Virus record (IMG/VR): IMGVR_UViG_3300032236_002285
Coordinates: 372,001 to 436,000 of that record
DNA: 64,000 bases
Strand: one strand, 5' to 3'
Part shown: in pieces, positions 25,944 to 62,517 of the stretch
Layout: every line of letters begins with the position of its first letter
Position numbering within the stretch: position 1 is the first letter of the stretch
Made by a program: the position numbers and the translations under genes
The notes under the pieces: generated by a model
What the model saw: only the letters and a program-made list of their open reading frames with translations
What the model was told of the DNA's origin: nothing
Database searches by the model: none

Positions 25944-26155
25944 TGAAATTTGACCACGATATATTATTTCAGTTCCTATCAGAGGAAGATCAAAAATCAT
26001 TTATGGTTTGGGACAATGTTATTATTAACTATGCCGGAAACATTTTGGCAACTTTCAGATCACCATTTGATGAGAGAATTGTAATACCATTTGAAGAATA
26101 CCAAATGAAGTTGAAACAAAAAGAAAGAGAAATTAAGTTAAATAAAATATTATAA
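25943..26155 (+). CDS. C-tagged hypothetical protein
   Basis: Ends EREIKLNKIL. Confidence 0.7.
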   Translation: MKFDHDILFQFLSEEDQKSFMVWDNVIINYAGNILATFRSPFDERIVIPFEEYQMKLKQKEREIKLNKIL

Positions 26156-26156
26156 A

Positions 26157-26660
26157 ATGTTAAGAGAAGATAATTCAGGGTTTGTTCATTTCCCGTTGCC
26201 ATCTAAAATGATAAACCGTTTAGAAACCGGTAAAACATTTGTGTATCTTGTAGCATTTGATGCTGAAGATGTTTCAAACAATGCTTATGAGTTATCTAAT
26301 CTTAGGTTGGTTTTACCCGGTACTTTCATTGCTGATGATATTAGTATGAGAGCTAAACCAAAAGGTGGTAAAATGTCAATTGATGAATTGATTAAGAATA
26401 ATCTAAAAGATGATGAATATGATAATCTTTATTTCCCAAATTCAGGTGATAAAGATGATCTTAAAAAAATGATGTCTATTCCTTTAACAACTTGTATCTG
26501 TATGGGTTGGTCTGAATATACATTTGATATAAAAGATGATTTAGGGTTTTGGAGTGCTTCATTCCGTGACTTAACCAATGAGGGTAGAAAACTTTACTAC
26601 TCAATAAAAAAGTTACACAATAATAAAGAAGTTAGAATTCTAACATTTAGCAATATTTAA
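26157..26660 (+). CDS. Hypothetical protein
   Basis: ORF within the operon. Confidence 0.7.
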   Translation: MLREDNSGFVHFPLPSKMINRLETGKTFVYLVAFDAEDVSNNAYELSNLRLVLPGTFIADDISMRAKPKGGKMSIDELIKNNLKDDEYDNLYFPNSGDKDDLKKMMSIPLTTCICMGWSEYTFDIKDDLGFWSASFRDLTNEGRKLYYSIKKLHNNKEVRILTFSNI

Positions 26661-26692
26661 CTTGCTAAATTAAAAATTAAGAATTAAATTTG
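26661..26692 (+). promoter_or_regulatory. Bacteroidota sigma70-type promoter
   Basis: CTTG-N20-TAAATTTG. Confidence 0.65.
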
Positions 26693-26705
26693 TAAAAAAA
26701 TATTT

Positions 26706-28112
26706 ATGCCATACGAAAGAAAAACATTTGATTTAGTCATATCTGAAGAGTTGAGGAGTGTGTTATCAGAAATTGAGTCTGATTCACAGGTAGCAAAATT
26801 GTTGCTAAAGAAAAGACATGATAAAGATGATTTGGTCGAAGACCCAATCAATTTTATTTCAGTTGCGCATGATAAAACAAAAATCTCTTATCTAACTACA
26901 GATAGGATTGCTAAAATTGAAGATCCTTCTCAATATTGGTCTTCTTCTCGTAGATTTGCCGCTAAGCCAGGTGGATTTATCTCAAAACTATTCAAAGATA
27001 TTCCAGCTAAAGAGGTAGAGAAATTCTCTAATCTTTATCGCGCTCAATCCAATAAACCTAAATTTGAATTAAAAATAGTTGAGGGTGGTGAAATCCTTAA
27101 ATACTATCATTATAAGTCTTATCTTGATGAAAGAGGTACGCTTGGTGCTTCTTGTATGAAACACGATAGTTGTCAAAACTTCCTTGATATCTATATAAAC
27201 AATAATAACATCGTTAAGATGTTAGTTATGTTAAATAATGATGGTATGTTGATGGGTCGTGCTCTTCTTTGGAATTTTGATAGTAATAAAATTATGGATC
27301 GTATTTATACGATTTCTGATGAAGAACTTGTTTTCCATTTCAAGAAATGGGCAACTGACAATGGCTATCTTTATAAATCAGAACAAAACTGGTACAACAC
27401 TCTTAATTTTGAAAACCTTTCAACATCTAAACAAGAGTTGAAGCTTAAAATTAAATTGAATAACTCTTCTGTTAGAAGGTTTCCTTATGTTGATACTTTC
27501 AAGTTTTTAGACGAAGAAAATGGCTTATTACTAAACTATATACCAGATGGTGATTTTAGAACTTTGTGTGCTTCTGATGGTAGTAAGTATGGCTCTGACT
27601 ATTTAATATTTGATGGCATTGATAGAGTGTTGAGACATAGAGGTGATAGTGTTTATCTAAGATATTTAGATATCAGAACACATGCTAATAATGCTCGTTA
27701 CTCTGATATTAATGATGAATATATCTTACACAAAGATTGTAACTATGATGAAGATTTAGGTGATTATATCTTCAACAAGAATAACGATAAGTATAATAAT
27801 GCTGAAAGAATTCAAGAAAGAAGAGACTATCTTAAAAATAGAAGAGAAGAGATGGAAAAAAGAGAATCTTCAAGTAGGTCTAAAAAAAGAAATAGCTGGA
27901 TAGAAGAAATTATCAATAATAATGACTTATCAGATGAAGGTATCCGTGAGGTATATAATCGCATGACAAGCATGACTGGTATTCCGCGAGGTTATTTTGG
28001 AAGCTTTGATTATTTTGATGCTAGTGATATTTCTATAAGAGAAGAAAGACAAGAAACTCAATCTGAAGATCATTCGGAACCAACTCAAGAAACAGAAATA
28101 ACTGAACTATAA
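26706..28112 (+). CDS. Conserved phage protein of unknown function
   Basis: SCM...GRALLW...MDRIY...FPYVDTF motif string, recognised from memory of phage proteins. Confidence 0.65.
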   Translation: MPYERKTFDLVISEELRSVLSEIESDSQVAKLLLKKRHDKDDLVEDPINFISVAHDKTKISYLTTDRIAKIEDPSQYWSSSRRFAAKPGGFISKLFKDIPAKEVEKFSNLYRAQSNKPKFELKIVEGGEILKYYHYKSYLDERGTLGASCMKHDSCQNFLDIYINNNNIVKMLVMLNNDGMLMGRALLWNFDSNKIMDRIYTISDEELVFHFKKWATDNGYLYKSEQNWYNTLNFENLSTSKQELKLKIKLNNSSVRRFPYVDTFKFLDEENGLLLNYIPDGDFRTLCASDGSKYGSDYLIFDGIDRVLRHRGDSVYLRYLDIRTHANNARYSDINDEYILHKDCNYDEDLGDYIFNKNNDKYNNAERIQERRDYLKNRREEMEKRESSSRSKKRNSWIEEIINNNDLSDEGIREVYNRMTSMTGIPRGYFGSFDYFDASDISIREERQETQSEDHSEPTQETEITEL

Positions 28113-28115
28113 AAC

Positions 28116-28140
28116 AAAACCCTCGTCAAGAGGGTTTTTT
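28116..28140 (+). terminator. Rho-independent terminator
   Basis: aaaaccctc-gtcaa-gagggtttttt. Confidence 0.8.
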
Positions 28141-28193
28141 ATTTTAAACTTTATCACTATTTCCGTATAAAACATAAAAATATAGTATGATAG

Positions 28194-30383: not shown

Positions 30384-31511
30384 TTATTTAGCTTCTTCGC
30401 CACCTAATTGTTTTTCAATTTCGGTTATCTTATCTTTATTTGCTTCTGGTTCTTGATATAGTTTAGCTATATCATCTAACTTTTTAATCGCTTCAGGATT
30501 TTTAGTTTTTACATCTGCTAAAGTTTTAACTAAATCTTCTTGACCTTCTGCTTTTTCAACCTCACCTTCAGCTTTCATAAGTATGTCAGCTATAGTTTTA
30601 GTAAAGTCAGCACCTTCAAAAGAAACTTTATCACCTTCAATTTTAGAAATCTTTTTAATTCCAATTTCATCAGTTTGAAGTTCTTTCATTTTACCTTCAT
30701 TTGTTTTTTTCTTATCGTCATCTGTTAAAGCATCCCATTTAGCCTGGTCAAATTTATCTCTTTTATAAACTACGGTATCACCTACTTTATAATCCTGAGT
30801 CGCACCCGCTCCACCAAATGTTATTTTTTTAGCCTCAAGATTTTTATTCAACTCGTCTATCGTTATAGCTTTTTCAAACTTAACCAATTGAGGAATTAAA
30901 GTTTTTTCAACCCAATTTATAATTGCGTCTTTTTTCTTTTTACCATCATTTGCTGCCGCTAATAACTTTTTAACATCAGGAAGATGTGTAGTATCCTTTA
31001 AGTCAACATTAATCTTTTTAGGATCAACTTTACCATCAGTTGGGCCACCAGCAAATTTATATTGAGCTATTGCCTTATTTCTAATTGTTTCAAAAACATA
31101 TTGAGTATCAGCAGGTAACCAGTTCATTGGTTCACCTTTTTTTGGTGGATATTTTTTATTAAGAGCATCTAACATTGGTTTTAATCCTTGTTTTCCTAAA
31201 GCACCTGTTTCTGGATTAAGTATACCATCAACAAGAGTTAAACAATCTTGATCATTAGCCTCTGGTCTTTTTTTGAACTCCTCCATTTGTTGTTTAAACA
31301 TATAAGAATCATCTGTTGGATTTAAGGTATTTGTGCTTATCCATTTTGTTATATCTTCTTGCTTAGGATTTGCACCAAGCTTGTCTAATTCGGCAATAGC
31401 TTTATTCCAAAGATTCTTAAAAAAGTTAATAACACCACCTAATAATTCTTCATTAACAGGCTCCGTGTTTTTTAGTTTTCTATGAGACTCGAATGTTTTA
31501 ATATACTTCAT
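30384..31511 (-). CDS. N-tagged Lys/Glu-rich protein, probably virion-associated
   Basis: MKYIKTFE...VNEELLG. Confidence 0.75.
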   Translation of the reverse strand: MKYIKTFESHRKLKNTEPVNEELLGGVINFFKNLWNKAIAELDKLGANPKQEDITKWISTNTLNPTDDSYMFKQQMEEFKKRPEANDQDCLTLVDGILNPETGALGKQGLKPMLDALNKKYPPKKGEPMNWLPADTQYVFETIRNKAIAQYKFAGGPTDGKVDPKKINVDLKDTTHLPDVKKLLAAANDGKKKKDAIINWVEKTLIPQLVKFEKAITIDELNKNLEAKKITFGGAGATQDYKVGDTVVYKRDKFDQAKWDALTDDDKKKTNEGKMKELQTDEIGIKKISKIEGDKVSFEGADFTKTIADILMKAEGEVEKAEGQEDLVKTLADVKTKNPEAIKKLDDIAKLYQEPEANKDKITEIEKQLGGEEAK

Positions 31512-31602: not shown

Positions 31603-32073
31603 ATGGAACAAATCAATTCACTTAATCAAGTCGCTGACTTTCACAGGACATTTAATGCACCTATTTTAGATACACCTCAAATCCCATCTGAACAAAGATG
31701 CCAACTTCGTGTTAATCTTTTACAAGAAGAATTAAATGAACTATCACAAGCTATTAAAGACAATGATATTGTAGAAATCGCAGATGCTCTTTGTGATATT
31801 CAATACGTTCTTTCCGGTGCTGTATTAGAATTTGGCTTAGGTGAAAAATTTGTTGAGTTATTCAATGAAGTTCAAAGAAGTAATATGTCTAAAGCTTGTT
31901 CAACTGAAGAAGAGGCTCAAAGAACTTTAGAACACTATAAACAAAAAGATGGCACTGAAGGTTACTACAAACAAGTAGGAGATAAATGGGTTGCTTATAG
32001 AAACGGTGATGATAAAGTATTAAAATCAGTTGGGTATTCAGCTGCAAATATAAAGGGGATGTTGAATGATTAG
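31603..32073 (+). CDS. MazG-like/PRA-PH nucleoside triphosphate pyrophosphohydrolase
   Basis: VADFHRTF, LLQEELNEL, EIADALCDIQYV, EVQRSNMSK; start moved to MEQ after TAAAC-N18-TATAA (31553-31580). Confidence 0.85.
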   Translation: MEQINSLNQVADFHRTFNAPILDTPQIPSEQRCQLRVNLLQEELNELSQAIKDNDIVEIADALCDIQYVLSGAVLEFGLGEKFVELFNEVQRSNMSKACSTEEEAQRTLEHYKQKDGTEGYYKQVGDKWVAYRNGDDKVLKSVGYSAANIKGMLND

Positions 32074-32392
32074 TGATTATGTTGAATACAAACTAAGACT
32101 AAAAGTAACAACTCATCTTAGATTAGCCGGGCTTGATACTAATGTTGATATATCATCATTGGTTGAAAAGGTTAAAGAAATGGGTGACTATAAAATAAGT
32201 TGGCAAGAGAATATACCAGTTGCTATAAATATGTTTGACTTTCCACATAAAGTAGAAGTTGATTTTGGTAAGTACTTTATTTTAAACGAAGATGGTAGTT
32301 TTAAGCAGCAACTTTATTCATCAGAGTTTATAGATTTTTCTCTAAAAGAAATGAGAGAATATAGATTAAGTAAAATATTAAAAGAGTTATGA
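32066..32392 (+). CDS. C-tagged hypothetical protein
   Basis: Ends MREYRLSKILKEL. Confidence 0.7.
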   Translation: MISDYVEYKLRLKVTTHLRLAGLDTNVDISSLVEKVKEMGDYKISWQENIPVAINMFDFPHKVEVDFGKYFILNEDGSFKQQLYSSEFIDFSLKEMREYRLSKILKEL

Positions 32393-34745: not shown

Positions 34746-35368
34746 TGAGTTACTTAAATGAAATAAAAGCTTATATGAGAGATATTAATCTTGACATCCT
34801 AATGAATTGCCCGGATGTCAAGATTGATATTTCTAAACGATACAAAAATAAGTTTCGTCTTTTTTATCCAAGCCGTAAACTTATTAAGTATGTAACTAAT
34901 ATCGGTGGTGTACTAACCGGTTCAAGAGCTATTCGTTGTTATACAATTGGTGGTAAACCAATTCTTGAAAGAAAAGTAGATGATTGGGATTTTATTGTTA
35001 CTCTTGATATGGCTTTTAAGATTTGCGCAGATATGGGTATAGATGAAATTCCACAAGTTGATAACGTAATAAGTATTAGAAATCAAAGAATGTGGAGACA
35101 TCCTGATTACTCTGAAGCTTATCGAGTTGGTCCAGTTGATGTTCAATTAATTGTGAAAGAAGAACTTCCAGACTATACAGAGATTGATGGTGTTAGAATT
35201 TCTAACTTTGGTTATTCAGTTTCACAAAAAATTGGATTGACTACCGAGTTACAAAGTAAACTTACTGGTGAAAAATCTGAATATGATGAACACTATCACA
35301 AACACATTTCTGATATGAAAGAAATGATTATAAAATTTAATAGTTTAAAATGGAAACAACCGGCGTAG
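34745..35368 (+). CDS. Putative nucleotidyltransferase-fold protein with an N-terminal C-tag-like helix
   Basis: LTGSRA...DDWDF (GS plus DxD); MRDINLDIL near the N-terminus. Confidence 0.55.
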   Translation: MSYLNEIKAYMRDINLDILMNCPDVKIDISKRYKNKFRLFYPSRKLIKYVTNIGGVLTGSRAIRCYTIGGKPILERKVDDWDFIVTLDMAFKICADMGIDEIPQVDNVISIRNQRMWRHPDYSEAYRVGPVDVQLIVKEELPDYTEIDGVRISNFGYSVSQKIGLTTELQSKLTGEKSEYDEHYHKHISDMKEMIIKFNSLKWKQPA

Positions 35369-36261
35369 CAAATATATTAGACGGTAAATTAGTATCTAAC
35401 CACATACTTGATGGTGTTAGAGAGAATGTTGATAAACATGTAAATGAATCAAAAGAAAAGTTAGGCTATACAATCGCAAGACCAAGTATGGCTATCGTTC
35501 TTGTTGGTAACAATCCTGCTTCTGAATCATATGTTAAAGGCAAATTAAAAGCTTGTGAGAAAGCCGGTATCAATCATCATCTAATTAGATTTGATGAATC
35601 AATATCTGCTTTTGATTTATTAACAGAAGTTAAGAACTTAAACAAATCTTCTTATGATGGTTTCATTGTTCAACTTCCTTTACCAGAACATATCAAACCA
35701 GAGCCAATTATCAATGAGATAAGTGCTTACAAAGATATTGATGGGTTTCATCCACTTAACTTTGGTAAGATGGCTTTAGGTCAAAAAGCAATGAGACCAG
35801 CAACTGCTTATGGTATTCTAAAGTTGTTAGAGTATTATCAACTTGAAACAAAAGGTAAACATGTGGTTGTTATTGGTCGTTCAAATATTGTCGGTAAACC
35901 TATTTCTATTATGCTTGGTAATGACTTTAACATCGGACGAGCTACTGTTACCTCATGTGATATTAACACTCCCAAATCGCTTCTAATTGAAGAATGTCAA
36001 AAAGCAGATATCGTTATTGTAGCTGTTGGTAAGCCTTGTTTAGTAACGGCTGATATGATTAAAGAAGGTGCTGTTGTGATTGATGTTGGTATTAATAAAT
36101 TAGAATCAGGTAAGTTAGTTGGTGATTGTGACTTTGGCGCGATTGCTGAGAAAGCAAGTTGGGTTACTCCGGTACCAGGCGGTGTTGGACCAATGACTAT
36201 ATCTGGTTTGATTCTAAATACTTATGAAGCTTGGAAAATGAAAAACTTTATCAATGAATAA
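35350..36261 (+). CDS. folD: Methylenetetrahydrofolate dehydrogenase/cyclohydrolase
   Basis: VQLPLP, KDIDGFHP, VVIGRSNIVGKP, VIDVGIN, TPVPGGVGPMT. Confidence 0.95.
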   Translation: METTGVANILDGKLVSNHILDGVRENVDKHVNESKEKLGYTIARPSMAIVLVGNNPASESYVKGKLKACEKAGINHHLIRFDESISAFDLLTEVKNLNKSSYDGFIVQLPLPEHIKPEPIINEISAYKDIDGFHPLNFGKMALGQKAMRPATAYGILKLLEYYQLETKGKHVVVIGRSNIVGKPISIMLGNDFNIGRATVTSCDINTPKSLLIEECQKADIVIVAVGKPCLVTADMIKEGAVVIDVGINKLESGKLVGDCDFGAIAEKASWVTPVPGGVGPMTISGLILNTYEAWKMKNFINE

Positions 36262-36499
36262 AGTAATGTGTGTTAGTAATAAGGGTTGGGAACCTCTTCC
36301 GATAACAATCGGTAAGATTTATGATGTTATTAGGTTAGAGAATATACCATTCTCACCACATAGGTATGATGATCCAAGTGGTCCTTTTTATTTAATCAAG
36401 TGTGACAATAAAGAATTAAAACATATTGATGCTAATAGATTTCGTGAGTTAACATTAGATGAGAAAAGAGAATTAAAACTTGAAGATTTGGGAATATGA
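36254..36499 (+). CDS. C-tagged small beta-rich protein
   Basis: TIGKIYDV..YLIKCD..; ends KRELKLEDLGI. Confidence 0.75.
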   Translation: MNKVMCVSNKGWEPLPITIGKIYDVIRLENIPFSPHRYDDPSGPFYLIKCDNKELKHIDANRFRELTLDEKRELKLEDLGI

Positions 36500-36825
36500 T
36501 GCTAAATTGTAGCAGTGAAGAGTCTAAACAAGTGTGTCAAATTATTAATGAATTTGACAAACATAGAGAAAATTATATAAAAGTTTTTAATGTTGAGTTA
36601 ACAAAAGGTAAAGTTTCTAATAGAATACATATCGGTGCACCATTAAGACAAGTAGAAGTTAATTGTTTTAAAGTAAGACATTCAAGTGAATTTGCTTACA
36701 ATAAAGTTTCAACTGGTACACGATATATCTATGAAGGTGATATATTATACACAGAGATTTATAAATGGTATAATAGACATCTACGAGACAATAAATTAGA
36801 AGAATTATTTAATGGAATTTTATAA
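36496..36825 (+). CDS. C-tagged hypothetical protein
   Basis: Ends LRDNKLEELFNGIL. Confidence 0.7.
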   Translation: MMLNCSSEESKQVCQIINEFDKHRENYIKVFNVELTKGKVSNRIHIGAPLRQVEVNCFKVRHSSEFAYNKVSTGTRYIYEGDILYTEIYKWYNRHLRDNKLEELFNGIL

Positions 36826-37105
36826 CTTATTTAAGTTAGTATTTTCAATTGTAATTTATATTATATTATCACCAATCATTATTCCTATTTTATTAATCAA
36901 TGAAGTAAGATGGAATAAAGGTGTTTGTAGAAAGTGTAACTCTGATAGATATGATTTAGATTTCAGACCAGATAAGTTTATTAACCATCACTATGTTTGT
37001 AAGAAGTGTGGATATAGATTCTTATCATCAAGACATAGAATTCAACCGAGTAATAATCAATTAAAAACTCTGATAAGAGAAAATAAGATAAATAAAATAT
37101 TATAA
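36812..37105 (+). CDS. C-tagged membrane-anchored Zn-ribbon protein
   Basis: TM helix, CRKC..CKKC; ends IRENKINKIL. Confidence 0.7.
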   Translation: MEFYNLFKLVFSIVIYIILSPIIIPILLINEVRWNKGVCRKCNSDRYDLDFRPDKFINHHYVCKKCGYRFLSSRHRIQPSNNQLKTLIRENKINKIL

Positions 37106-37106
37106 A

Positions 37107-37370
37107 ATGATTTACCCATCAAGAATAAAAGGTCAGGAATATCCTCTTAGTAAAGGGGATATTGTTGTTTGTATAACTGAGAATTTTGGTGAGTTTACTT
37201 TTGGTAAAAAATATACTTTATACTCTGACTTTGATGGTAATACTTTACCAATTACATCAGATTTAGGTAATCAACCATTACCTTGTTACTACGCACCAAC
37301 TGGATATTATTTTCTACCTCTTCATATCTGGAGAGAATTAAAAATAAACAAAGTATTAGAAAATGAGTAA
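37107..37370 (+). CDS. C-tagged small beta-rich protein
   Basis: GDIVVCI..FTFGKKY; ends WRELKINKVLENE. Confidence 0.7.
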   Translation: MIYPSRIKGQEYPLSKGDIVVCITENFGEFTFGKKYTLYSDFDGNTLPITSDLGNQPLPCYYAPTGYYFLPLHIWRELKINKVLENE

Positions 37371-37542
37371 AGTGACAAAAGAAGAACTTGAAAGATATAA
37401 AAAAATCTTAGCAAATGAAATATCAGCTTTTTTAAAAGAATGTCCAATTTGTAAACAAAAGTTCAAAGATTTTTTAGATATCAAAATCATTTGCACTAAT
37501 TGTGATAGAGAAGAGAAACTAAACAAAGTATTAGAAAAATGA
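37363..37542 (+). CDS. C-tagged 59-aa Zn-finger protein (absent from the ORF track)
   Basis: MSKVTKEELERYKKILANEISAFLKECPICKQKFKDFLDIKIICTNCDREEKLNKVLEK; fills the gap and overlaps both neighbours. Confidence 0.75.
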   Translation: MSKVTKEELERYKKILANEISAFLKECPICKQKFKDFLDIKIICTNCDREEKLNKVLEK

Positions 37543-37763
37543 TAAAAGTAGGAGATAGAGTTAGAAACATCAGAGTAGAAGTATATAAAGATGAACCTAT
37601 AATTGTGATTGATAAATCTTGGAGAGATAGATATCATATTAAATACCTAAATGTTTATACGGTTCAGAATACAAATATGTTATCTTGGGTTGATGAAGGT
37701 GATATAACTTTAGATATAGAATATTATAGAAATCTTAAATTAGAAAAATTATTAAATGAATAA
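37539..37763 (+). CDS. C-tagged small beta-rich protein
   Basis: MIKVGDRV; ends YRNLKLEKLLNE. Confidence 0.7.
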   Translation: MIKVGDRVRNIRVEVYKDEPIIVIDKSWRDRYHIKYLNVYTVQNTNMLSWVDEGDITLDIEYYRNLKLEKLLNE

Positions 37764-38757
37764 TATAAACGATTTTATTAAAACCTTATCAATTAAAGAT
37801 AAGAAGACGCTTTCACAGAAAGGTCTTAAACTTGTAGAAGAAGTAGGTGAGCTAGCAAGAGTTATTTTACCTTATGATTCTGCTCACGGAACTAATCATA
37901 GATTTATTGACAGAGAAGCAATACTTGAAGAAGTAGTTGATGTTTATCTAACAAACATTTCAATTGCTCACTCATTAGGATTCACTGATGAGGAGTTTAA
38001 TGATATGTTGAGTAAGAAGTCAGAGAAGTGGTCTCAGTTACAAGCAAGTGAGGAAAAGGCTGAGTTCCCTCTACCTTTTGAAATTCATGTAACAATTGAA
38101 TCACCTAGTTCTATTGATAAATTCAAACAATCTTGTTCTTTAATTGAAGTTAAACCGATTGTAATTGATTTAGAGATTAATGATGGCTCTATTATTAAAG
38201 ATGTTATGACATCTTCTAAACACTTTGGTGATAACAGAACAGCTTATGAAGAATCAAAAAGAATCTGTAGAGAGTTAGAACTACAAGGTTTTAGAGTTTT
38301 GAGAAATAAAATAGAAAGTGTGCCTTGGCATCCAGCCGCTCCGGTTATTTCAACTGGTAAAGAGATTCCAAATGGTTGTTACTTTGAGGCACACATTGGT
38401 GTTGTTATTAAACCTGAAGAAAAAGATAAATTAAGTGACTTTGTTAAATATCTTGTGAAAACATCTTGCCTATTTAAGTCTGAATACTTATCAAAAAATA
38501 CAATTCCATTGTCAGGAACAGCCAAACTATCACAAAATTTCTTTAAGAAGTCTAAAGATGGTAATGAGTTTATCAATATGTTAACTTATAGAAGTAATAA
38601 ATGTGGTTCTGATAACTTCAAACTAGAAGTTGAGAGTATTAAAAATAGCTTACAAGAAGAAGGATTTGAATTTGAAAAAGTTGAAGTTGAATACGCTGTG
38701 TATGATACAAATGTAACACACGACGCAAAATGGATTTTAGGATATGAAGTCGCTTGA
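37756..38757 (+). CDS. MazG-like pyrophosphohydrolase domain fused to an unknown domain
   Basis: KLVEEVGELA..EEVVDV; C-terminal part has FEIHVT and YFEAHI motifs. Confidence 0.7.
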   Translation: MNNINDFIKTLSIKDKKTLSQKGLKLVEEVGELARVILPYDSAHGTNHRFIDREAILEEVVDVYLTNISIAHSLGFTDEEFNDMLSKKSEKWSQLQASEEKAEFPLPFEIHVTIESPSSIDKFKQSCSLIEVKPIVIDLEINDGSIIKDVMTSSKHFGDNRTAYEESKRICRELELQGFRVLRNKIESVPWHPAAPVISTGKEIPNGCYFEAHIGVVIKPEEKDKLSDFVKYLVKTSCLFKSEYLSKNTIPLSGTAKLSQNFFKKSKDGNEFINMLTYRSNKCGSDNFKLEVESIKNSLQEEGFEFEKVEVEYAVYDTNVTHDAKWILGYEVA

Positions 38758-39133
38758 TATTAGAACTATACAAAATTGGGTAAATCAAACACAAGTTGTT
38801 TGGTTACCTGACTTTGCTGAGATATTAGATATATCTTTTGATGAATGGGGTAGTAATTTAAACATACTATATCAGTTTGACTATCAGTTAGCCGGTACCA
38901 ATCAAAAAATGTTTAACATTTGGATAATGGATTCTAAAAACATATGTCCACCACCAGGTGACTTTTATAAATTCTTTGGAACAGTTGAAAAAAGATTTTC
39001 AGAAGTAAATTTGGCTAATGCTAATAACGGTAGAACAATCACGGTTGATACAGTAACAAAGTGTTATATTTTTATAGAAGAAGTAAAAACAATTGCTGAA
39101 AACAGAGAAGAAAAATTAAACGAAATACTATGA
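38744..39133 (+). CDS. C-tagged hypothetical protein
   Basis: Ends NREEKLNEIL. Confidence 0.7.
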   Translation: MKSLDIRTIQNWVNQTQVVWLPDFAEILDISFDEWGSNLNILYQFDYQLAGTNQKMFNIWIMDSKNICPPPGDFYKFFGTVEKRFSEVNLANANNGRTITVDTVTKCYIFIEEVKTIAENREEKLNEIL

Positions 39134-39474
39134 CAAAAATATATTTAGCCATTCCGTATTCAAGATACGAAGAAAAAAGTTTTAAGTTAGCCAATGAAAT
39201 TGCGGCTCAGTTAATTAACATGGGACACGTTGTTTTCTCACCAATCAGTATGTCACATCCGATTGCTGTTCACGGCAATCTAAAAGGTGACTGGGAAACC
39301 TGGAAAAGAATTGATTTTGAATTCATTAAGTGGTGTGATGAGGTAGTAGTTGTAAACTTTGATGAAGAAGCTGTTGCTAATTCAACTGGTGTTCAAGGTG
39401 AATTAGAATTTGCTAAAGAACTTGGTAAAAATATCAGATATTACTATGACAGGCCACGAGTGGAAAATAACTGA
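39130..39474 (+). CDS. DUF1937 / nucleoside 2-deoxyribosyltransferase-like protein
   Basis: KIYLAIPYS, VFSPISMSH, STGVQGELEFAKELGK. Confidence 0.75.
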   Translation: MTKIYLAIPYSRYEEKSFKLANEIAAQLINMGHVVFSPISMSHPIAVHGNLKGDWETWKRIDFEFIKWCDEVVVVNFDEEAVANSTGVQGELEFAKELGKNIRYYYDRPRVENN

Positions 39475-39475
39475 T

Positions 39476-39730
39476 ATGATTGAAAAAGGATTGGTCAGCT
39501 ATGTTAAAGGTGAAAAGGTTGTCTTATTCCGCAGAAAATCAAATGGTTATCCGAAAGGAATCAAAGATGGTGTTGAATACACTATAAGAGGAATCTATGG
39601 TGAAGGTATTGAAGTTGCTTTAAATTCTTCTGATGGTGTGGGTTGGTTACAATCCATAAAAGTCCACAAGACATATATGATACCTAAATATGCCTTGAGA
39701 GATATAAATCTTAAAAAACTTCTTAATTAA
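39476..39730 (+). CDS. C-tagged small beta-rich protein
   Basis: Start moved to just after the upstream stop; ends LRDINLKKLLN. Confidence 0.65.
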   Translation: MIEKGLVSYVKGEKVVLFRRKSNGYPKGIKDGVEYTIRGIYGEGIEVALNSSDGVGWLQSIKVHKTYMIPKYALRDINLKKLLN

Positions 39731-40455: not shown

Positions 40456-40515
40456 AGATTATATATTAAACAAAGTGAACTCTTAGAACTATAATTAAAA
40501 AAACATAATAAATAG

Positions 40516-52423: not shown

Positions 52424-55400
52424 ATGGCTTTACCTGGTTTATTTCCACTTTACCCCGATCCAATACCAATGAAATATCAAGTTTCATTAGGTCTACCGCC
52501 TCTTCCGGTAAGTGAAATAACTAAGTCAATTGGTATAACTTCATCAAGCTCATTTTTAGTTCCTAATATTGAATATCTTCAAAAGTTTATTGAAGGTGAT
52601 TTAGGAATTGCTGATAAGGCAGTAAAAGAAACATTATATAAAAACTTTAATGACCCTATTGCTCAGAATAATGATAAAGTATTCAAAAGCTATGCTAGTC
52701 TAAATCAAATTGACATACCAGATATTAATAAGTATAAAGTAGATGGTAAAATAAAATTCCCTAAAGAAGATGTAACAGCTCCTAATTTAGATGGCATTGG
52801 ATTCAAAGCATTTGAGAAAACCATTATGACTTCTATCTTTGAAACTCAGAAACCATATCTTGAAGTTGCTAAATTAGTTATTGCTAATGTTGCTAAAATA
52901 GAAGACATAACCGCAAGAGTCATGCCTTTATTGGGTGTTCCTCTTAAAACTAAATCGCTAAAACCAACAGGTAATAGTGGTGCGGGTGATAGACCTAAAG
53001 CAATTGGTTATCAAAATGGTGATGAGTTAAAGAAAGCTCTTTCTCAATTACAAACACTAACTAATCAAGGATCAAAGATAAAAATAGATAAAAATGGTAA
53101 TGCTACTCAAAGTATAACACCAACCGGAACAGCAAGCGTTTCGGGTAACGGTGATAATACAAACTGGCAGATACTATCAAGTGTTTATTCAACTGGTAAA
53201 TTCATACCAGGCATAGACTATCAATATACTTATATTGATTTACCAAGCCAAACAAAGAACACACCAGAAACAGCTGACTTAAATTTAGGAGATGATGATC
53301 CATATAGTGGTTATAAACCAGAGAGAATAATATTGGGTATATTTAGATCGGATGGAACGCCATTAGATCCTAATGAATATCTAAAGACTATTGGTTCAAA
53401 TGGCAATAATATAACATATAATGAAACAAATTTCAAAAGAGCTGATTGGGTATTAAAATCACCGAAGTGGCATTTACCACCATATCTTTCAGATACAAGA
53501 TCGGCTATTTACTCTTGGCCGGCATTTGGCTCACCAACATATAAGTGGAAAGGTCCTTTATTATTAACTCAAGATAGTAAGACGAAACCAGCGGATGGTT
53601 GGGAAATAATGAAATATGAAAAAGGAGATAAGAATGTAATTACCGGAGATGACGCTATCGAAGGTGACCCAATAATAACTGGGTTTGATACTAATCAAAT
53701 TAATGAGTATAAGTCTTATTTTACCGATACGGTTAAATATAAAATGAATCAATCTGATGGTTTAGAACAAACAGAAAAAGATCAATATTCTAATGAAATA
53801 ATTAGCAAACTAAATATTCAATCACATCTTCAAAATGTTTACTTATATGGTCAATCAAAGTCATCTGTTTACAAACAAATTAATAATAAACCGGCTTACC
53901 CTGAATCATTAAAAATATCTTTTAAGCCTTTTCAGATATATTCAGCATCGGCTTCTCAAGATGTTAATCTTGCTGCTTATAATAAATCAGTGGGTTTACA
54001 ACCAGGATTTATTTGGATTGATCCAGAATCTGATTATGAAACAAAGATAATAAGAGTTGATCCTACAACTAAAATTGCTTTTGAAGAGGGAAAAGGTCAG
54101 CCTCAAATTTCATCAACAATTAAATCATTTGTTAAAAACAAAGCCAGTTTTAGTATATCTAATGGTCAAAACTTTAATATTGATATTCAAAAGAACGGCT
54201 TAGTAACGGAATCATTTACAAATGTTAATCAGTATGTTCTTGAAAATTGGAATTATAATTCAGATACTAATTTACCACCAGAAAATAGATTTGAGAATAC
54301 TAACTTTTATAACATCTCTATTTGGTCAACAACACCTACAAAAGACTATGTTAATAAATCAGGAACAATAGAATTAAATCCTGACTCCTACTATCGTGAG
54401 TTAGTTAGAGAAAATGATAAATGGCTATATAAATCATATATCTATGATAGCAATGGTGATAAATCTTATGTCGTGATATCAGATGGTGATATACTACTTA
54501 ATGATAATATGAAAACTAGAGTTAGAATTCAAAATGGTTATATTATAAGATGGTATTATGCTTATAATAGAGTATTTAATGCTACAAACCTACCCGCATT
54601 TGGAAAAGGAAGAAACTTAGTATTAAACTACACAAACGATTTGGATTCAAATTCTAACTTAATCATAAACACAACAGATACTGATATACCTTTATATCAA
54701 TTAAAAGTCGAAAATAGTGATTTTCCTTATGGTAAAATTATAGACCCATCAAAAATAACTAACGACAACTTAATTAAAGACCAATTATTCTCAAAAGGTA
54801 AGTATGGTCATGGTGATGCTGAAAATCCACAAGAGATAGAAGTTATACAAAGATATATGCTAACTGATTTAGACACAGAGTCTTATTATATCATAGAGGG
54901 AGTTTTAACAGAAAAAAATACACAAACTGACACGGTACCTTCAACAGGCGGCGCTGCGTCCGGTGGTGGTTATTATAGACTACCACATGCTTTAGGTGCG
55001 ACTAAAGTTTTCTTATCTTTATTAGTAGATATCTTTTCAAAGTTAATACCTCAAATAACTAAGATGATAGCTCTTTTCAAAAATCCAGGAAGTTTTATAA
55101 TAGACATTATACAAAGAAAGTTAGGTGAAGGTTTTTCTATTTTTTCTAAACAATCATTTGATACATTTGAAAAGGCAAAATCTATTTCAAATAAGAAAGT
55201 TGATAGCACCAATAGAGTATCCGATAAGGTTAATAGGCTTAAAGATACATTTAAAAACTCACCATTATCTAATGTGGTTTATGTTGATAAAAAAGGTAAT
55301 TACAAATTTTTACTTGATGGTGTAGCTATGTTACCATTTGAGATGTTTGGTTTAAGTATTCCTTTTGGTGCTGATTTGAACTTTTCTAATTTACCTGATG

Positions 55401-56719
55401 TGCCTATAAAATTAATAACAGATGTTAAAACAGCAAAAGCTAAAAATATTCAAGACTTCTTAAAACCTAAGTTAAAAGAATTTAACGGACCAGGTAGTAC
55501 CGGTGTTGCGCCAACAGGAGCAGGAAAGCTAGCACCTGGATTAAATATCTCAGATATAAAGTCAATTAAAGATGATCCTATTTATAATACTAATGTAAAT
55601 AATGGTAAAACCAATCCTAATGATTATCAGATTATTGATGTTAAATATTCAACTGGTTCTTATATAAATGGTGTGAATTATAATTATATTTATATTAATC
55701 AAGATGAAGATAAAATATTAACTGATGCTAATAATTTAGTAAATACTCCTAATGAAGCGGTCGATTTACCTAAGGCTCAAAAAACTTTACAGGATTTGAA
55801 TGATGCTCAAAAGAAAGACCCTACAAATGAGGCAATAAAAGATATGATTAATAAACTTAAAAATAAGTTAGCAAATCTTTCTGATAATACTCAACCAATT
55901 ATTAAAATGTTATTAGGCTTTGTTACAATACCTGTAAAAATAATTGGTGGTATAATAAGTTGGTTAATGGACTTTTTCAAAAGTCTAACAAATCCACTAA
56001 CACTACCTGCTAAAATAGCAGAATTATTATCTTTTAGTTGGCTCATGAAGTTTTTCACACCTATTGGTATGATGGAACTTATAGGATTTAAGTTTGAACC
56101 AGCTAAACTAGCAGAGTGGCTTGCCTTGGTTAAGGTACCAAGTGTAAAACCACCTAATATATCACCTAAAATACCAGATGGTTTTGATTTACCAAGTGCT
56201 CATTATTACAAGGATGCAACACCAAAAGGTAGATTTTTAATACCAGATGATTTTGATATAGCTGACTTAAATATGGTAATTGCTGCTCCGTTTATTCCTA
56301 AATTACCAACCTATACAGCTAGACAATTCAGAGAGAATCCAACAAGACCTATTAAGTTAATATTGCCTTTTCTTTGTTTCTTTGAAAAAATAATAAATGG
56401 TATAATTGATTTTATTTGGTCAACATTAGGTATAGAAGCTTTAATACCAGCACCTCATATAAAATTATGTAGTAATTCAGTAAATCCTAGTATAAGTGAT
56501 GCTGTTAAGATAGCTGATGACTTGAAGAAAACGGGAACTGAACCGGTTGCTACAGGTGGTACCTTTAGTAATGGTAGTAGCACTAATATACCAACAGATG
56601 CTGGGTTTTTATATGATATAACTCTTGATAATGGGACCGTAGTAAAAGGTTTAAACTATGAAGAAATGCAAAAGTATATTAAAGACCATGAGAATATTGG
56701 TTATGATTTTAAATTCTAA
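52424..56719 (+). CDS. Large (1431 aa) putative late, probably structural protein
   Basis: AAATATATA upstream; internal duplication YSTGKFIPGIDYQYTYI / YSTGSYINGVNYNYIYI; hydrophobic helical segments. Confidence 0.7.
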   Translation: MALPGLFPLYPDPIPMKYQVSLGLPPLPVSEITKSIGITSSSSFLVPNIEYLQKFIEGDLGIADKAVKETLYKNFNDPIAQNNDKVFKSYASLNQIDIPDINKYKVDGKIKFPKEDVTAPNLDGIGFKAFEKTIMTSIFETQKPYLEVAKLVIANVAKIEDITARVMPLLGVPLKTKSLKPTGNSGAGDRPKAIGYQNGDELKKALSQLQTLTNQGSKIKIDKNGNATQSITPTGTASVSGNGDNTNWQILSSVYSTGKFIPGIDYQYTYIDLPSQTKNTPETADLNLGDDDPYSGYKPERIILGIFRSDGTPLDPNEYLKTIGSNGNNITYNETNFKRADWVLKSPKWHLPPYLSDTRSAIYSWPAFGSPTYKWKGPLLLTQDSKTKPADGWEIMKYEKGDKNVITGDDAIEGDPIITGFDTNQINEYKSYFTDTVKYKMNQSDGLEQTEKDQYSNEIISKLNIQSHLQNVYLYGQSKSSVYKQINNKPAYPESLKISFKPFQIYSASASQDVNLAAYNKSVGLQPGFIWIDPESDYETKIIRVDPTTKIAFEEGKGQPQISSTIKSFVKNKASFSISNGQNFNIDIQKNGLVTESFTNVNQYVLENWNYNSDTNLPPENRFENTNFYNISIWSTTPTKDYVNKSGTIELNPDSYYRELVRENDKWLYKSYIYDSNGDKSYVVISDGDILLNDNMKTRVRIQNGYIIRWYYAYNRVFNATNLPAFGKGRNLVLNYTNDLDSNSNLIINTTDTDIPLYQLKVENSDFPYGKIIDPSKITNDNLIKDQLFSKGKYGHGDAENPQEIEVIQRYMLTDLDTESYYIIEGVLTEKNTQTDTVPSTGGAASGGGYYRLPHALGATKVFLSLLVDIFSKLIPQITKMIALFKNPGSFIIDIIQRKLGEGFSIFSKQSFDTFEKAKSISNKKVDSTNRVSDKVNRLKDTFKNSPLSNVVYVDKKGNYKFLLDGVAMLPFEMFGLSIPFGADLNFSNLPDVPIKLITDVKTAKAKNIQDFLKPKLKEFNGPGSTGVAPTGAGKLAPGLNISDIKSIKDDPIYNTNVNNGKTNPNDYQIIDVKYSTGSYINGVNYNYIYINQDEDKILTDANNLVNTPNEAVDLPKAQKTLQDLNDAQKKDPTNEAIKDMINKLKNKLANLSDNTQPIIKMLLGFVTIPVKIIGGIISWLMDFFKSLTNPLTLPAKIAELLSFSWLMKFFTPIGMMELIGFKFEPAKLAEWLALVKVPSVKPPNISPKIPDGFDLPSAHYYKDATPKGRFLIPDDFDIADLNMVIAAPFIPKLPTYTARQFRENPTRPIKLILPFLCFFEKIINGIIDFIWSTLGIEALIPAPHIKLCSNSVNPSISDAVKIADDLKKTGTEPVATGGTFSNGSSTNIPTDAGFLYDITLDNGTVVKGLNYEEMQKYIKDHENIGYDFKF

Positions 56720-59787: not shown

Positions 59788-59788
59788 T

Positions 59789-60899: not shown

Positions 60900-60911
60900 T
60901 GAAAAGATATT

Positions 60912-60938
60912 AAAACCCATCTCAAAAAGATGGGTTTT
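60912..60938 (+). terminator. Rho-independent terminator
   Basis: aaaacccatct-caaaa-agatgggtttt. Confidence 0.8.
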
Positions 60939-60976
60939 GCTTTTTAATATATAATTATACAAATAAGATTTATAAT

Positions 60977-61561
60977 ATGAAAAAGTTCAGTAACATATCA
61001 AACGTAAAGGTTTCAGAAGAACCTAAAATAGAAGTTAAACAATTAAACGAAGAAGAAATGTTTAAGGTTAAGGTAATGAACCTTATGGAACAACTTCTTT
61101 CTGTAAGAACTTATGGCCCGGTTGATAGATATCTAAGAGCCGGTAACATTAAAGTTGTTGGTAAAGAAATGTTTTTAGAAGCTTTAATGGACTTACTAAA
61201 AGATAAATCTTCAAAAGATGAAAAGAAAATATTAGAATCACTTAAAGCTGAAGTTTCCAACTGGGAAGTGATTGATTCTAAAATTGATGAAGTAAATCAA
61301 AAAATTGCTGAGAATCAAGAAAAGGATAAAATGATTCCTCATAGAAACAAGCTCAAATCTCTTTATAATAACTACGGTCAAGACGAAGAAATGTTTATGA
61401 ACATGGTTCAAGAAGCTTGTAACAAAATTACAAATAGCGAAACAGCTTATTTAAGAGGTTTAACAGCCGAATATATGGCTAATGAAGGTAAATACCCAAA
61501 AGAAGTATTTGCTAAAGTATCTGAATTATTTAAAGAAAAATCTAAACAATTAGGCTCATAA
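60977..61561 (+). CDS. Putative late helical protein with a weak N-tag (MKKFS)
   Basis: TAATATATA at 60945-60953. Confidence 0.7.
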   Translation: MKKFSNISNVKVSEEPKIEVKQLNEEEMFKVKVMNLMEQLLSVRTYGPVDRYLRAGNIKVVGKEMFLEALMDLLKDKSSKDEKKILESLKAEVSNWEVIDSKIDEVNQKIAENQEKDKMIPHRNKLKSLYNNYGQDEEMFMNMVQEACNKITNSETAYLRGLTAEYMANEGKYPKEVFAKVSELFKEKSKQLGS

Positions 61562-61568
61562 TTAATTA

Positions 61569-61823
61569 ATGACTGATCTAACAGACAATCAACTTGAAAA
61601 GCTTTATGCTATGTCTGAAATCCACTACAAATGGTTCCAGATATATTCTCCTGAGACTAAATATGAAGATGTTTTAAAGCTTAATCATATAAAGATGTTA
61701 AGTATAATGGAAGGTTGTTCTGATTGTTCAGAAGATATGTTAGATTTTATTTTTGATGCTATTATTAGAGATTATAAAGAAATGTTAAATGATTATTCAA
61801 TTGGCTTAGACGATATTATCTAA
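61569..61823 (+). CDS. Hypothetical protein
   Basis: ORF within the operon. Confidence 0.6.
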   Translation: MTDLTDNQLEKLYAMSEIHYKWFQIYSPETKYEDVLKLNHIKMLSIMEGCSDCSEDMLDFIFDAIIRDYKEMLNDYSIGLDDII

Positions 61824-62186
61824 GTTCTTTCTTCTGCGATACTTTTGTTTTGACTTTTCCACTTCATCTTCGTTGTTTCCGTACATATAGTTATAATAAT
61901 AAAGAAGTGTTGCGTCTTGTAAGTTTTCTTTAATACAATCATCACAAATAGCAATCACGAATTGATCACCATCATGTGTTGAACCATAACCAGCGTCAAT
62001 GATATGAATTATACCATTATCAATCATTTCATTATTGACATTAACCAAACTACCATCTTCTCTTCTTTCTCTTTTCCAAATAACATCCTCTTCACTTTGA
62101 GGGGGTGAATCTTCAGTTGAGATTTTAGAACCCATTCTTGGTGTATAAGGAATTACATTATTTTTCTTACAACAGATGCAATACAT
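61806..62186 (-). CDS. C-tagged Zn-binding protein
   Basis: CICC...AGYGSTHD..ICDDC; ends RRRKNLDNIV. Confidence 0.7.
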   Translation of the reverse strand: MYCICCKKNNVIPYTPRMGSKISTEDSPPQSEEDVIWKRERREDGSLVNVNNEMIDNGIIHIIDAGYGSTHDGDQFVIAICDDCIKENLQDATLLYYYNYMYGNNEDEVEKSKQKYRRRKNLDNIV

Positions 62187-62335
62187 TAGTTAAATATCTT
62201 TTTAATTTTTTTCATTCTTTTCTTTTCTCTACTTAATGGTCTGTTATAAGTTATAATAGAAGATATTCTTGTTTCTAAATTAGGTAGAAACCTTATTTTA
62301 GCACCTGGCTTTAACTCAAAGAATTCTTTTTTCAT
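62186..62335 (-). CDS. C-tagged 49-aa protein (absent from the ORF track)
   Basis: MKKEFFELKPGAKIRFLPNLETRISSIITYNRPLSREKKRMKKIKKIFN; coupled to both neighbours. Confidence 0.7.
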   Translation of the reverse strand: MKKEFFELKPGAKIRFLPNLETRISSIITYNRPLSREKKRMKKIKKIFN

Positions 62336-62517
62336 ATATCAAATATGTTTTTAATTTTTTTCATTCTTCTGCTTTGCTTAGAAGGAAACTTCATTGTCAT
62401 AAAAGATGGATAAATAATTCTATCGTAGTTTTTAATACTATCTTGAATTTTACCCTTCTGTTCTTTTCTAAGTGATGCTAGTTCTTCTAACATCTTCTTC
62501 ATTTGTTCTTCGTTCAT
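62332..62517 (-). CDS. C-tagged small protein
   Basis: Ends RRMKKIKNIFDI. Confidence 0.7.
   Translation of the reverse strand: MNEEQMKKMLEELASLRKEQKGKIQDSIKNYDRIIYPSFMTMKFPSKQSRRMKKIKNIFDI

What the first reader, a model, noticed from the sequence alone, without database searches (positions are those of the whole stretch)
26139..62368. Near-identical DNA at the 3' ends of different C-tagged genes suggests cassette shuffling
Seen: TAAACAAAGTATTAGAAAA (19 nt) at 37345 and 37520 ends two consecutive genes. TAAATAAAATATTATAAAATG (21 nt, covering tag, stop and next ATG) occurs at 26139 and 37089. A 28-nt segment with one mismatch occurs at 62192 and 62341. Synonymous positions and the stop/start junction are conserved although the gene bodies are unrelated. 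Inference: the tag-coding junction serves as a micro-homology for inserting or excising gene cassettes, or for new ORFs to acquire the tag.
Basis: partly seen in the sequence, partly recalled or inferred. Interest (0 to 1): 0.6.

Follow-up and report, generated by a model that had tools for sequence, protein, structure and literature searches.

The report
Shared peptide tag marks shuffled phage cassettes
In this 476-kb freshwater huge phage, the near-identical DNA at gene ends comes from a roughly ten-residue C-terminal peptide tag carried by about one gene in ten; the DNA identity is no more than that tag and codon bias predict, but related phages show these small genes really are gained, lost and reordered one at a time, with some joints inside the tag.

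Summary
All three repeats are real. They are the three longest exact direct repeats in the window, against 0.1-0.2 expected from composition.

They encode the end of a C-terminal peptide tag, R-[DE]-x-K-[LI]-x-x-[LI]-[LG]-(I/K)-stop. It sits on 71 of 646 ORFs, against 0.6 expected from the internal rate. The stop/start overlap of the next gene adds to the identity.

Once peptide, tag codon usage and junction are held fixed, 19- and 21-nt identities are expected (p about 0.3). Arg is coded by both AGA and CGT. A relative at 37% GC keeps the peptide with other codons. The two families sharing the 21-mer each keep their own tail across 53-100% identity. The DNA identity is therefore a by-product of the peptide.

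The cassette idea still holds:
- Ten related loci with both flanking conserved genes show nine gene orders.
- One relative equals the window minus exactly the 175 bp between the 19-nt repeats.
- Another lineage carries a hybrid tag from a tag-to-tag crossover.
- A third fuses half a tag onto an untagged conserved gene.

Other joints use only ATGA(T) or 3 nt, and untagged small genes turn over as fast.

Verdict: partly supported. This is a new variant of T4-type modular shuffling.

The parts
25943..26155 (+). 70-aa tagged cassette whose tail ends KLNKIL-stop. Its last 17 nt plus the next ATG form copy 1 of the 21-nt repeat (26139-26159).
   Evidence: Absent between the homologs of 25086-25943 and 26157-26660 in LR745206. 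The family keeps this tail in 54 protein clusters.
35350..36261 (+). Conserved left anchor of the island: FolD-type methylene-THF dehydrogenase/cyclohydrolase, untagged.
   Evidence: Pfam E=3e-62. Present in most related loci.
36254..36499 (+). 81-aa tagged cassette with tail RELKLEDLGI-stop and an ATGA overlap with the next gene.
   Evidence: Joined to three different downstream genes in relatives. Carries a hybrid tail in L146-type genomes.
36496..36825 (+). 109-aa tagged cassette with tail RDNKLEELFNGIL-stop. The ATG of the next gene lies inside its last codons.
   Evidence: Its body is missing in L146-L152 and in L037.
36812..37105 (+). 97-aa tagged cassette with weak zinc-ribbon hits and tail RENKINKIL-stop. 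Holds copy 2 of the 21-nt repeat (37089-37109).
37107..37370 (+). 87-aa tagged cassette: SH3-like barrel plus C-terminal helix, tail WRELKINKVLENE-stop. Holds copy 1 of the 19-nt repeat (37345-37363).
   Evidence: The last 1-3 codons change with the downstream neighbour.
37363..37542 (+). 59-aa tagged cassette ('f10'): helix, CxxC...CxxC, then the tag. Holds copy 2 of the 19-nt repeat (37520-37538). Variably present in relatives.
37539..37763 (+). 74-aa tagged cassette ('f15') with tail YRNLKLEKLLNE-stop.
37756..38757 (+). Conserved right anchor of the island: 333 aa, untagged here. Used to fetch related loci.
   Evidence: Fused to half a tag in L006 and L007.
38744..39133 (+). 129-aa tagged cassette with tail REEKLNEIL-stop. 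Absent in L006, L007, L003 and L001.
39446..39730 (+). 94-aa cassette with a tag-like tail (LRDINLKKLLN-stop).
62186..62657 (-). Three tandem small paralogs (49, 61 and 47 aa) with a basic tail variant ending KKIKxIF. The 28-nt repeat (62192-62219 and 62341-62368) is the reverse complement of two of these tails.
   Evidence: Relatives hold 1-2 small genes with the same type of tail at this position.
63493..63953 (-). Two tagged genes (73 and 80 aa). They start an array of seven or more tagged genes that runs past the window end.
   Evidence: None of the seven has a homolog in 19 related loci.
17295..17603 (+). 102-aa tagged gene with tail KLNRILK-stop. Other tagged genes in the window: 19043-19387, 21233-21463 and 32066-32392.

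Best explanation
The window lies in a 476-kb, 30% GC huge phage. About 11% of its genes end in the same C-terminal peptide tag: a hydrophobic or aromatic residue, then R-[DE]-x-K-[LI]-x-x-[LI]-[LG]-(I/K)-stop. These genes are mostly small ORFs of 45-130 aa with unrelated bodies.

Shown:
- The tag is selected as a peptide.
- Coded in AT-rich biased codons, and followed by a stop/start overlap with the next gene, it produces 15-21-nt DNA identities between unrelated genes without any shared DNA ancestry.
- Small genes, tagged and untagged, are single-gene cassettes packed end to end among conserved nucleotide-metabolism genes. They are gained, lost and reordered between related phages.
- Joints lie within a few bases of the stop/start overlap or inside the tag, with 3-19 nt of microhomology.

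Inferred:
- Events arise by short-homology or illegitimate recombination during replication or co-infection.
- Survivors are those that keep both reading frames and the coupled start.
- Because the tag is interchangeable between proteins, an in-frame crossover inside it gives a viable hybrid. The tag therefore acts as a tolerated, sometimes used joint, and can be passed to another ORF.
- The tag is not a dedicated recombination site.
- Its biochemical role is unknown. My leading guess is a short helix that serves as a common docking or turnover signal.
For: Tag is real and terminal:
- 71 motif hits lie within 5 residues of a C-terminus, against 0.6 expected from the internal rate.
- A relative at 28% GC has 0 tagged genes of 368, so AT-richness alone does not make the tag.

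Selection acts on the peptide:
- Arg is AGA 72% and CGT 21%.
- L044 codes the same Arg with CGT where its orthologs use AGA.
- G004 at 36.6% GC has 87 tagged genes with Leu as TTA 18%, against 69% here.
- 24 of 71 tagged genes have no same-strand gene within 40 nt downstream.

DNA identity is explained:
- The codon-resampling null gives p about 0.3.
- There is no neighbour effect.
- The tails of the 25943 and 36812 families are old and family-specific.

Cassette flux:
- Gene maps.
- 9 gene orders in 10 loci and 80 distinct adjacencies, 46 of them spaced -8 to +3 nt.
- The 25943 cassette is absent in LR745206.
- Seven window-only tagged genes lie upstream of 62654-63496.

Joints:
- L009 carries the exact product of recombination between the 19-nt repeats.
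- L146-L152, from seven samples, carry a hybrid tag.
- L006 and L007 carry the anchor fused to half a tag across a 3-nt match.
- The L037 joint is ATGAT.

Other:
- The last 1-3 codons of a tag follow the downstream gene.
- The tag is helical in both AlphaFold models.
Against: - With genome-wide codon usage, the 21-mer excess is nominally significant (p=0.002). Some shared DNA ancestry or local conversion cannot be excluded, especially for the adjacent pair that shares the rarer AAC and GTA codons.
- Only three joints could be placed inside or against a tag.
- Relatives are 70-93% identical in DNA, so the direction of each event (insertion or deletion) and the exact crossover base are not resolved.
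- Selection alone could place surviving joints at gene ends.
- No read-level evidence was obtainable.
- The biochemical role of the tag is untested.
Confidence: 0.7

Rival explanations
1. One reading: the tag-coding DNA and junction are themselves a conserved recombination site, like PeSLs or attC. The site is maintained because it mobilises cassettes, and the peptide is secondary.
For: - The 19-nt repeats flank a variably present cassette, and the exact recombinant exists.
- A hybrid tag exists.
- There is a nominal excess of 19-nt and 21-nt matches under genome-wide codon usage.
Against: - Synonymous codons vary freely, including AGA/CGT for Arg.
- A relative at 37% GC keeps the peptide with different codons.
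- There is no excess once tag codon usage is used.
- Adjacent tags are not homogenised.
- Several joints use only ATGA(T) or 3 nt.
- Untagged cassettes move too.
- There is no tyrosine recombinase, and no inverted repeats at cassette ends.
Confidence: 0.1
2. Pure by-product: the repeats come only from peptide and codon constraint. The tag plays no part in recombination, and joints sit at gene ends only because selection removes everything else.
For: - Null-model p is about 0.3.
- Most joints are at ATGA.
- Tagged small genes are conserved about as often as untagged ones: 25% against 36%, p=0.14.
Against: - Three independent joints lie inside a tag rather than at the stop/start overlap.
- One of them coincides exactly with the 19-nt repeat.
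Confidence: 0.17
3. The shared 3' ends are residual homology. All tagged genes would be diverged paralogs of one small-protein family (beta-barrel plus terminal helix), with the tail as the slowest-evolving part.
For: - The third pair is exactly this: tandem paralogs.
- Many tagged bodies start like SH3-type barrels, and the 37107 model is a barrel plus helix.
Against: - 182 tagged bodies from three genomes fall into 138 phmmer clusters.
- Bodies include a zinc-ribbon protein and proteins of 580-726 aa.
- The tails of the 21-mer pair belong to two separate old families.
Confidence: 0.03

Closest known systems
PeSL-mediated modular shuffling in hyperplastic regions of T4-type phages (Arbiol et al. 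2010, PMC2839356; Comeau et al. 2014, PMC4122927)
   Same: Small, mostly ORFan genes are clustered between conserved genes of a large lytic phage. They are inserted, deleted and replaced one module at a time between relatives. Short repeated sequences lie at module ends and can act as crossover points.
   Different: PeSLs are non-coding promoter plus stem-loop terminator cassettes lying between genes. Here there is no intergenic space. The repeated sequence is coding (a peptide tag) plus a stop/start overlap. Promoter-like sites are not enriched. Mini-circles could not be tested.
Integron gene cassettes (attC sites and IntI integrase)
   Same: Arrays of promoterless single-gene cassettes with a recurrent element at the 3' end of each.
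   Different: There is no tyrosine recombinase in the genome. There are no structured attC-like inverted repeats at cassette ends. The cassettes overlap each other.
C-terminal addressing tags and degrons (the ssrA tag, the C-terminal ClpX recognition signal of MuA)
   Same: A short motif at the extreme C-terminus is shared by otherwise unrelated proteins. The phage encodes ClpP and a ClpC-like ATPase, and ClpP is present in all four tag-bearing genomes examined and absent from both tag-less ones. The ATPase is also present in one tag-less genome (G005).
   Different: The sequence is unlike known degrons. Up to five extra residues can follow it. The ATPase lacks a Clp_N domain. The four tag-bearing genomes may be one clade, so the co-occurrence counts as roughly one observation. 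Nothing was tested biochemically.
Microhomology-mediated illegitimate recombination with translationally coupled (ATGA) gene junctions
   Same: Joints show 3-19 nt of identity and keep the frame and the coupled start. 26 of 69 tagged genes end in an ATGA overlap.
   Different: Here a family-wide peptide motif repeatedly supplies the microhomology and makes in-frame hybrids viable.

Membership tests
PeSL-type modular shuffling | Cassettes are flanked by a conserved non-coding promoter plus stem-loop terminator. | tested here: not met
   Cassettes abut or overlap. There are 50 promoter-like sites against 56.6 expected, and no terminators at cassette ends.
PeSL-type modular shuffling | Indels and replacements between related phages are bounded by the repeated element. 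| tested here: inconclusive
   Three joints lie in or against the tag. Others lie at ATGA(T) only.
PeSL-type modular shuffling | Excised mini-circles are formed by recombination between neighbouring repeats. | not testable with these tools
No reads were laid.
Integron cassette array | An IntI-type tyrosine recombinase is present. | tested here: not met
   PF00589 has no match in the 476-kb genome. The controls were positive.
Integron cassette array | An attC imperfect inverted repeat lies at each cassette end. | tested here: not met
   Only one 12-nt inverted repeat was found in 36200-37800, and it lies inside a gene body.
Shared C-terminal peptide tag (addressing signal or degron class) | The motif is confined to the extreme C-terminus of otherwise unrelated proteins. 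| tested here: met
   71 terminal hits against 0.6 expected. 78 body clusters among 83 bodies, and 138 among 182.
Shared C-terminal peptide tag (addressing signal or degron class) | Conservation acts on the peptide, not the nucleotides. | tested here: met
   Codon usage in tags is close to genome usage, and Arg is coded by AGA and CGT. The motif is kept at 37% GC with other Leu codons.
Shared C-terminal peptide tag (addressing signal or degron class) | A receptor such as a protease, unfoldase or docking protein recognises the tag. | not testable with these tools
   Only co-occurrence was seen: ClpP in 4 of 4 tag-bearing and 0 of 2 tag-less genomes; the ClpC-like ATPase in 4 of 4 tag-bearing but also 1 of 2 tag-less genomes.
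Microhomology-mediated recombination | A short identity is shared by both parental junctions at the crossover. | tested here: met
   19 nt, about 5-8 nt, 5 nt and 3 nt.

The most novel reading that the evidence does not exclude
The tag is a clade-specific addressing helix. It could be, for example, a turnover or docking signal read by the phage's own ClpC-like/ClpP machine or by another hub. It would make ORFan cassettes plug-and-play: any ORF that recombines in frame ahead of a tag is at once addressed. The tag would then be both a functional signal and the engine of gene birth and exchange in these huge phages. An N-terminal motif, M-[KR]-[YH]-L-K-x-[FY], is found in the same genomes and almost never together with the C-tag on one protein (0 of 45 such genes here; 2 of 23 in G004). 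It may be a second address of the same kind.
Probability: 0.15. Interest if true: 0.8.

Novelty: new variant of a known kind. Interest (0 to 1): 0.55.

Why it matters
Huge phages carry hundreds of small genes of unknown function, and how these arise and move is poorly understood. Here 5-17% of the genes in three sequenced relatives share one C-terminal tag. No Pfam or PHROG model covers it, and no paper in the searched library contains four common tag variants. The natural variants show gene-precise shuffling, and some crossovers occur inside the tag. That gives a concrete, testable model for how accessory genes stay exchangeable without breaking operons. It also gives a handle, the tag itself, for finding what dozens of ORFans have in common. 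A methodological point follows: exact 19-21-nt repeats in an AT-rich genome can come from a shared peptide alone.

Tried and rejected
I did not try another route, and read laying was not used.
- Anchor search with 26706-28112 in viral contigs found no relative.
- Pfam and PHROGs on 20 tagged proteins gave nothing covering the tag, only weak hits to the barrel part (DUF7210, DUF7244, DUF6501). The protein atlas returned only unnamed viral clusters.
- Foldseek on the 37107 model gave generic SH3/KOW barrels with E>0.02.
- Shine-Dalgarno explanation for the GGA in LGI tails: rejected. SD-like motifs are depleted upstream of starts, and leaders are simply A-rich.
- The tag as a mere by-product of A-rich leaders: rejected. 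CGT codes Arg in some tags, a third of tagged genes have no downstream gene, and the 28% GC relative has no tags.
- Concerted evolution of neighbouring tags: not seen.
- A resemblance of the small basic-tail genes to DNA polymerase B motif A: dropped. The adjacent 280-aa gene is a Pol-beta-type nucleotidyltransferase.
- Integron model: rejected.
- Complex prediction was not run. No partner had a prior high enough for a pass or a fail to change my odds.
- The large representative-protein search was not used. No claim here rests on absence of relatives.
Full report
CONTEXT

The window is bases 372001-436000 of a single 476,236-bp contig at 29.9% GC. The standard code gives 93% coding density, and reassigning TAG or TGA adds nothing. 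The only DNA relatives among deposited phages are the 635-642-kb 'uncultured phage' records LR745206 and LR756502, with faint hits to Prevotella Lak megaphages. The sequence is therefore a huge phage. Related contigs come from freshwater metagenomes. Gene starts lack Shine-Dalgarno motifs and sit behind A-rich leaders.

THE OBSERVATION

All three repeats are at the stated coordinates. They are the only exact direct repeats of 19 nt or more in the window. Markov models of order 1-5 predict 0.08-0.17 such repeats. Each lies at the 3' end of an ORF:
- The 19-mer ends the adjacent genes 37107-37370 and 37363-37542.
- The 21-mer ends 25943-26155 and 36812-37105 and includes the stop, one A and the next ATG.
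- The 28-nt pair is the reverse complement of the ends of the minus-strand genes 62186-62335 and 62332-62517.

WHAT THE REPEATS ENCODE

Genome-wide, 71 of 646 ORFs end in R-[DE]-x-K-[LI]-x-x-[LI]-[LG], followed by 0-5 residues, most often I or K. The rate of the same pattern inside proteins predicts 0.6 terminal hits. Arg is present in 70 of 71 tags and Lys in 66 of 71. Tagged proteins are small, with a median of 102 aa. They cluster at 340-476 kb of the genome.

Their bodies are diverse. 83 bodies form 78 BLAST clusters. 182 bodies from three related genomes form 138 phmmer clusters. AlphaFold models of two different bodies both end in a helix over the tag: an SH3-like barrel (pLDDT 68.6) and a helix plus zinc-ribbon protein (pLDDT 76.4). 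No Pfam or PHROG model covers the tag. A full-text search for four common tag variants found no paper.

PEPTIDE OR DNA?

Selection acts on the peptide:
- Arg is coded by AGA (72%) and CGT (21%). Lys, Glu, Asp and Gln codons match genome usage. Only Leu, Ile and Asn lean further to A-ending or T-ending codons.
- One ortholog (L044) codes the same tag Arg with CGT where the others use AGA.
- A relative at 36.6% GC (G004) has 87 tagged genes of 512. Its tags use TTA for Leu 18% of the time, against 69% here.
- A relative at 27.9% GC has no tags in 368 genes, so AT-richness does not create the motif.
- 24 of 71 tagged genes have no same-strand gene within 40 nt downstream, so the tag is not just the leader of the next gene.

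ARE THE EXACT IDENTITIES MORE THAN THE PEPTIDE PREDICTS?

I kept each tail's peptide and its stop/start junction and redrew synonymous codons.
- With genome-wide codon usage and a loose tag set, pairs sharing a 19-mer were 3 observed against 0.71 expected (p=0.03). Pairs sharing a 21-mer were 3 against 0.27 (p=0.002).
- With the strict tag set (71 tails, including 37363-37542) and tag codon usage, the figures were 2 against 1.0 (p=0.27) and 1 against 0.34 (p=0.30).
- Adjacent tagged genes are no more alike than random pairs, in amino acids (p=0.31) or DNA (p=0.07). Synonymous codon identity is 0.574 for neighbours and 0.578 for distant pairs.
- The 25943 family (54 clusters, 53-100% identity) and the 36812 family (9 clusters) each keep their own K[LI]NKIL-stop tail throughout. 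The 21-mer is therefore convergence, not a recent copy.
- The third pair lies in three tandem paralogs with a basic tail variant. Relatives have one or two small genes with the same type of tail at that position.

ARE THE GENES CASSETTES?

Yes. I used the conserved 333-aa gene 37756-38757 as an anchor and fetched 3 viral and 44 metagenomic loci, plus 7 more through a cassette homolog. Between the FolD gene (35350-36261) and that anchor:
- The window holds six small tagged genes.
- L003 and L028 hold none.
- LR745206 holds five, only one of them homologous.
- The other loci hold many intermediate combinations, including a reversed order in L035.

Ten loci with both anchors give nine gene orders. 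In and around the island there are 80 distinct gene adjacencies, 46 of them spaced -8 to +3 nt. The next interval (37756 to 40516) behaves the same way. The 25943 cassette is missing between its two neighbours in LR745206. Seven tagged genes upstream of 62654-63496 have no homolog in 19 related loci.

Turnover is not special to tagged genes. 25% of tagged and 36% of untagged ORFs of 130 aa or less have a homolog in two related genomes (p=0.14). Untagged cassettes also come and go.

WHERE ARE THE JOINTS?

- L009, and with two substitutions L010, matches the window's left flank up to and through the 19-mer, and the right flank from the 19-mer onward. It equals the window minus exactly the 175 bp between the repeats.
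- L146-L152, from seven samples, carry the 36254-family body with a hybrid tail. The proximal tag is its own. The distal part is that of 36496-36825, including the embedded ATG of 36812. The body of 36496 is absent, and the crossover lies in a match of about 5-8 nt inside the tag core.
- In L006 and L007 the anchor gene is fused in frame to the last six codons of the tag of 38744-39133 across a 3-nt match. The ATGA start of the following gene is kept.
- L037 lacks 36496 and 36812, with the joint in ATGAT at the stop/start overlap. Several other adjacencies diverge right after ATGA.
- The last 1-3 codons of a tag follow the downstream gene. The 37107 family ends ...VLENE before f10...VLEK before f15 and ...VLEI before the anchor.

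The direction of each event and the exact crossover base cannot be resolved at 70-93% DNA identity.

HOW IT MOST LIKELY WORKS

Shown:
- The tag is a peptide-level tag.
- Cassette flux is gene-precise.
- Joints lie at or within the tag and stop/start zone, with 3-19 nt of microhomology.

Inferred:
- Events arise by short-homology or illegitimate recombination during replication or co-infection.
- Only products that keep both frames and the coupled start persist.
- Because the tag is interchangeable, in-frame crossovers within it are viable. The tag is thus a tolerated and sometimes used joint, and it can be handed to another ORF.
- It is not a dedicated DNA site. There is no integrase and no attC-like structure, and there are no PeSL-like promoter-terminator units.

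THE TAG'S BIOCHEMICAL ROLE IS OPEN

The genome encodes ClpP (genome 440856-441380, among tagged genes) and a 710-aa two-AAA ClpC-like ATPase without a Clp_N domain. ClpP occurs in all four tag-bearing genomes examined and in neither tag-less one. The ATPase occurs in all four tag-bearing genomes and also in one tag-less genome, G005. These genomes may form a single clade, so this is a lead only.

LIMITS

- My ORF calls are mechanical.
- Metagenomic contigs could be chimeric in principle. However, the variant arrangements differ from the window by 7-30% along their whole length and recur in independent samples.

VERDICT

The inference is partly supported. The repeats are a by-product of a shared peptide tag, but the cassette shuffling is real and sometimes uses the tag as its joint.

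Noticed in passing
window 1324-6677, 8316-8540, 22232-23305, 30384-31511, 42237-42767, 48851-49096, and genome-wide: A second shared motif sits at the N-terminus: M-[KR]-[YH]-[LI]-K-x-[FY]-[NE]. It is on 45 genes of this genome, none of which carries the C-terminal tag. Relatives G002 and G004 have 33 and 23 such genes (two of G004's also carry the C-tag), and the two tag-less genomes have about none. It produces its own DNA repeats at gene starts: 18 nt at 1321/6306 and 16 nt at 5453/46731.
   Followed up: partly
genome 440856-441380 (-) and 284643-286775 (+), both outside the window: The phage encodes ClpP (E=2e-55) and a 710-aa ClpC-like double-AAA ATPase with a UVR motif but no Clp_N domain. 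ClpP presence tracks tag presence in six genomes; the ATPase is also present in one tag-less genome (G005).
   Followed up: partly
L069:1021-1320 (-), genome about 440.4 kb, next to ClpP: A 99-aa ORF matches the RNase P protein component (PF00825, E=3e-13), which is unusual for a phage.
   Followed up: no
window 33783-34745, 35350-36261, 39130-39474, 41696-42175: The cassette islands are embedded in a nucleotide and folate metabolism block: PRPP synthetase, FolD, a nucleoside 2-deoxyribosyltransferase-like protein (DUF1937) and DHFR.
   Followed up: yes
L146-L151, about 830-1700 bases downstream of the queried gene's start: In these close relatives the conserved 333-aa anchor gene (window 37756-38757) is replaced by an unrelated 289-aa gene with a weak Glyco_transf_92 hit. 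The flanking genes stay colinear.
   Followed up: no
L006:2700-2800: Where the f10 cassette is missing, this relative keeps nine bases of the f10 start fused to the f15 start. This shifts the f15 frame and leaves a 33-aa remnant, a scar of an imprecise event.
   Followed up: partly
window 13636-13722, 13735-13807, 14824-14898: Three tRNA genes: Leu-TAA, Arg-TCT and Met-CAT.
   Followed up: no
window 6728-7897 and 62654-63496 (-): Two nucleotidyltransferases: a 389-aa protein with a poly(A) polymerase/CCA-adding head domain (E=3e-30) and a 280-aa Pol-beta-type NTase.
   Followed up: no
window 52424-56719 and 23767-25008 (-): A 1431-aa ORF has no Pfam match. A 413-aa ORF has AAA_33/zeta-toxin-like kinase hits.
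   Followed up: no
whole genome: Shine-Dalgarno-like motifs are depleted upstream of starts. Positions -20 to -9 are 50-60% A. This fits a host with SD-independent initiation, such as Bacteroidota; that host assignment is an inference.
   Followed up: partly
window 37356-37637 (-): A 93-aa antisense ORF overlaps the real genes 37363-37542 and 37539-37763. A length-greedy ORF picker prefers it wrongly, so I replaced it by hand.
   Followed up: yes
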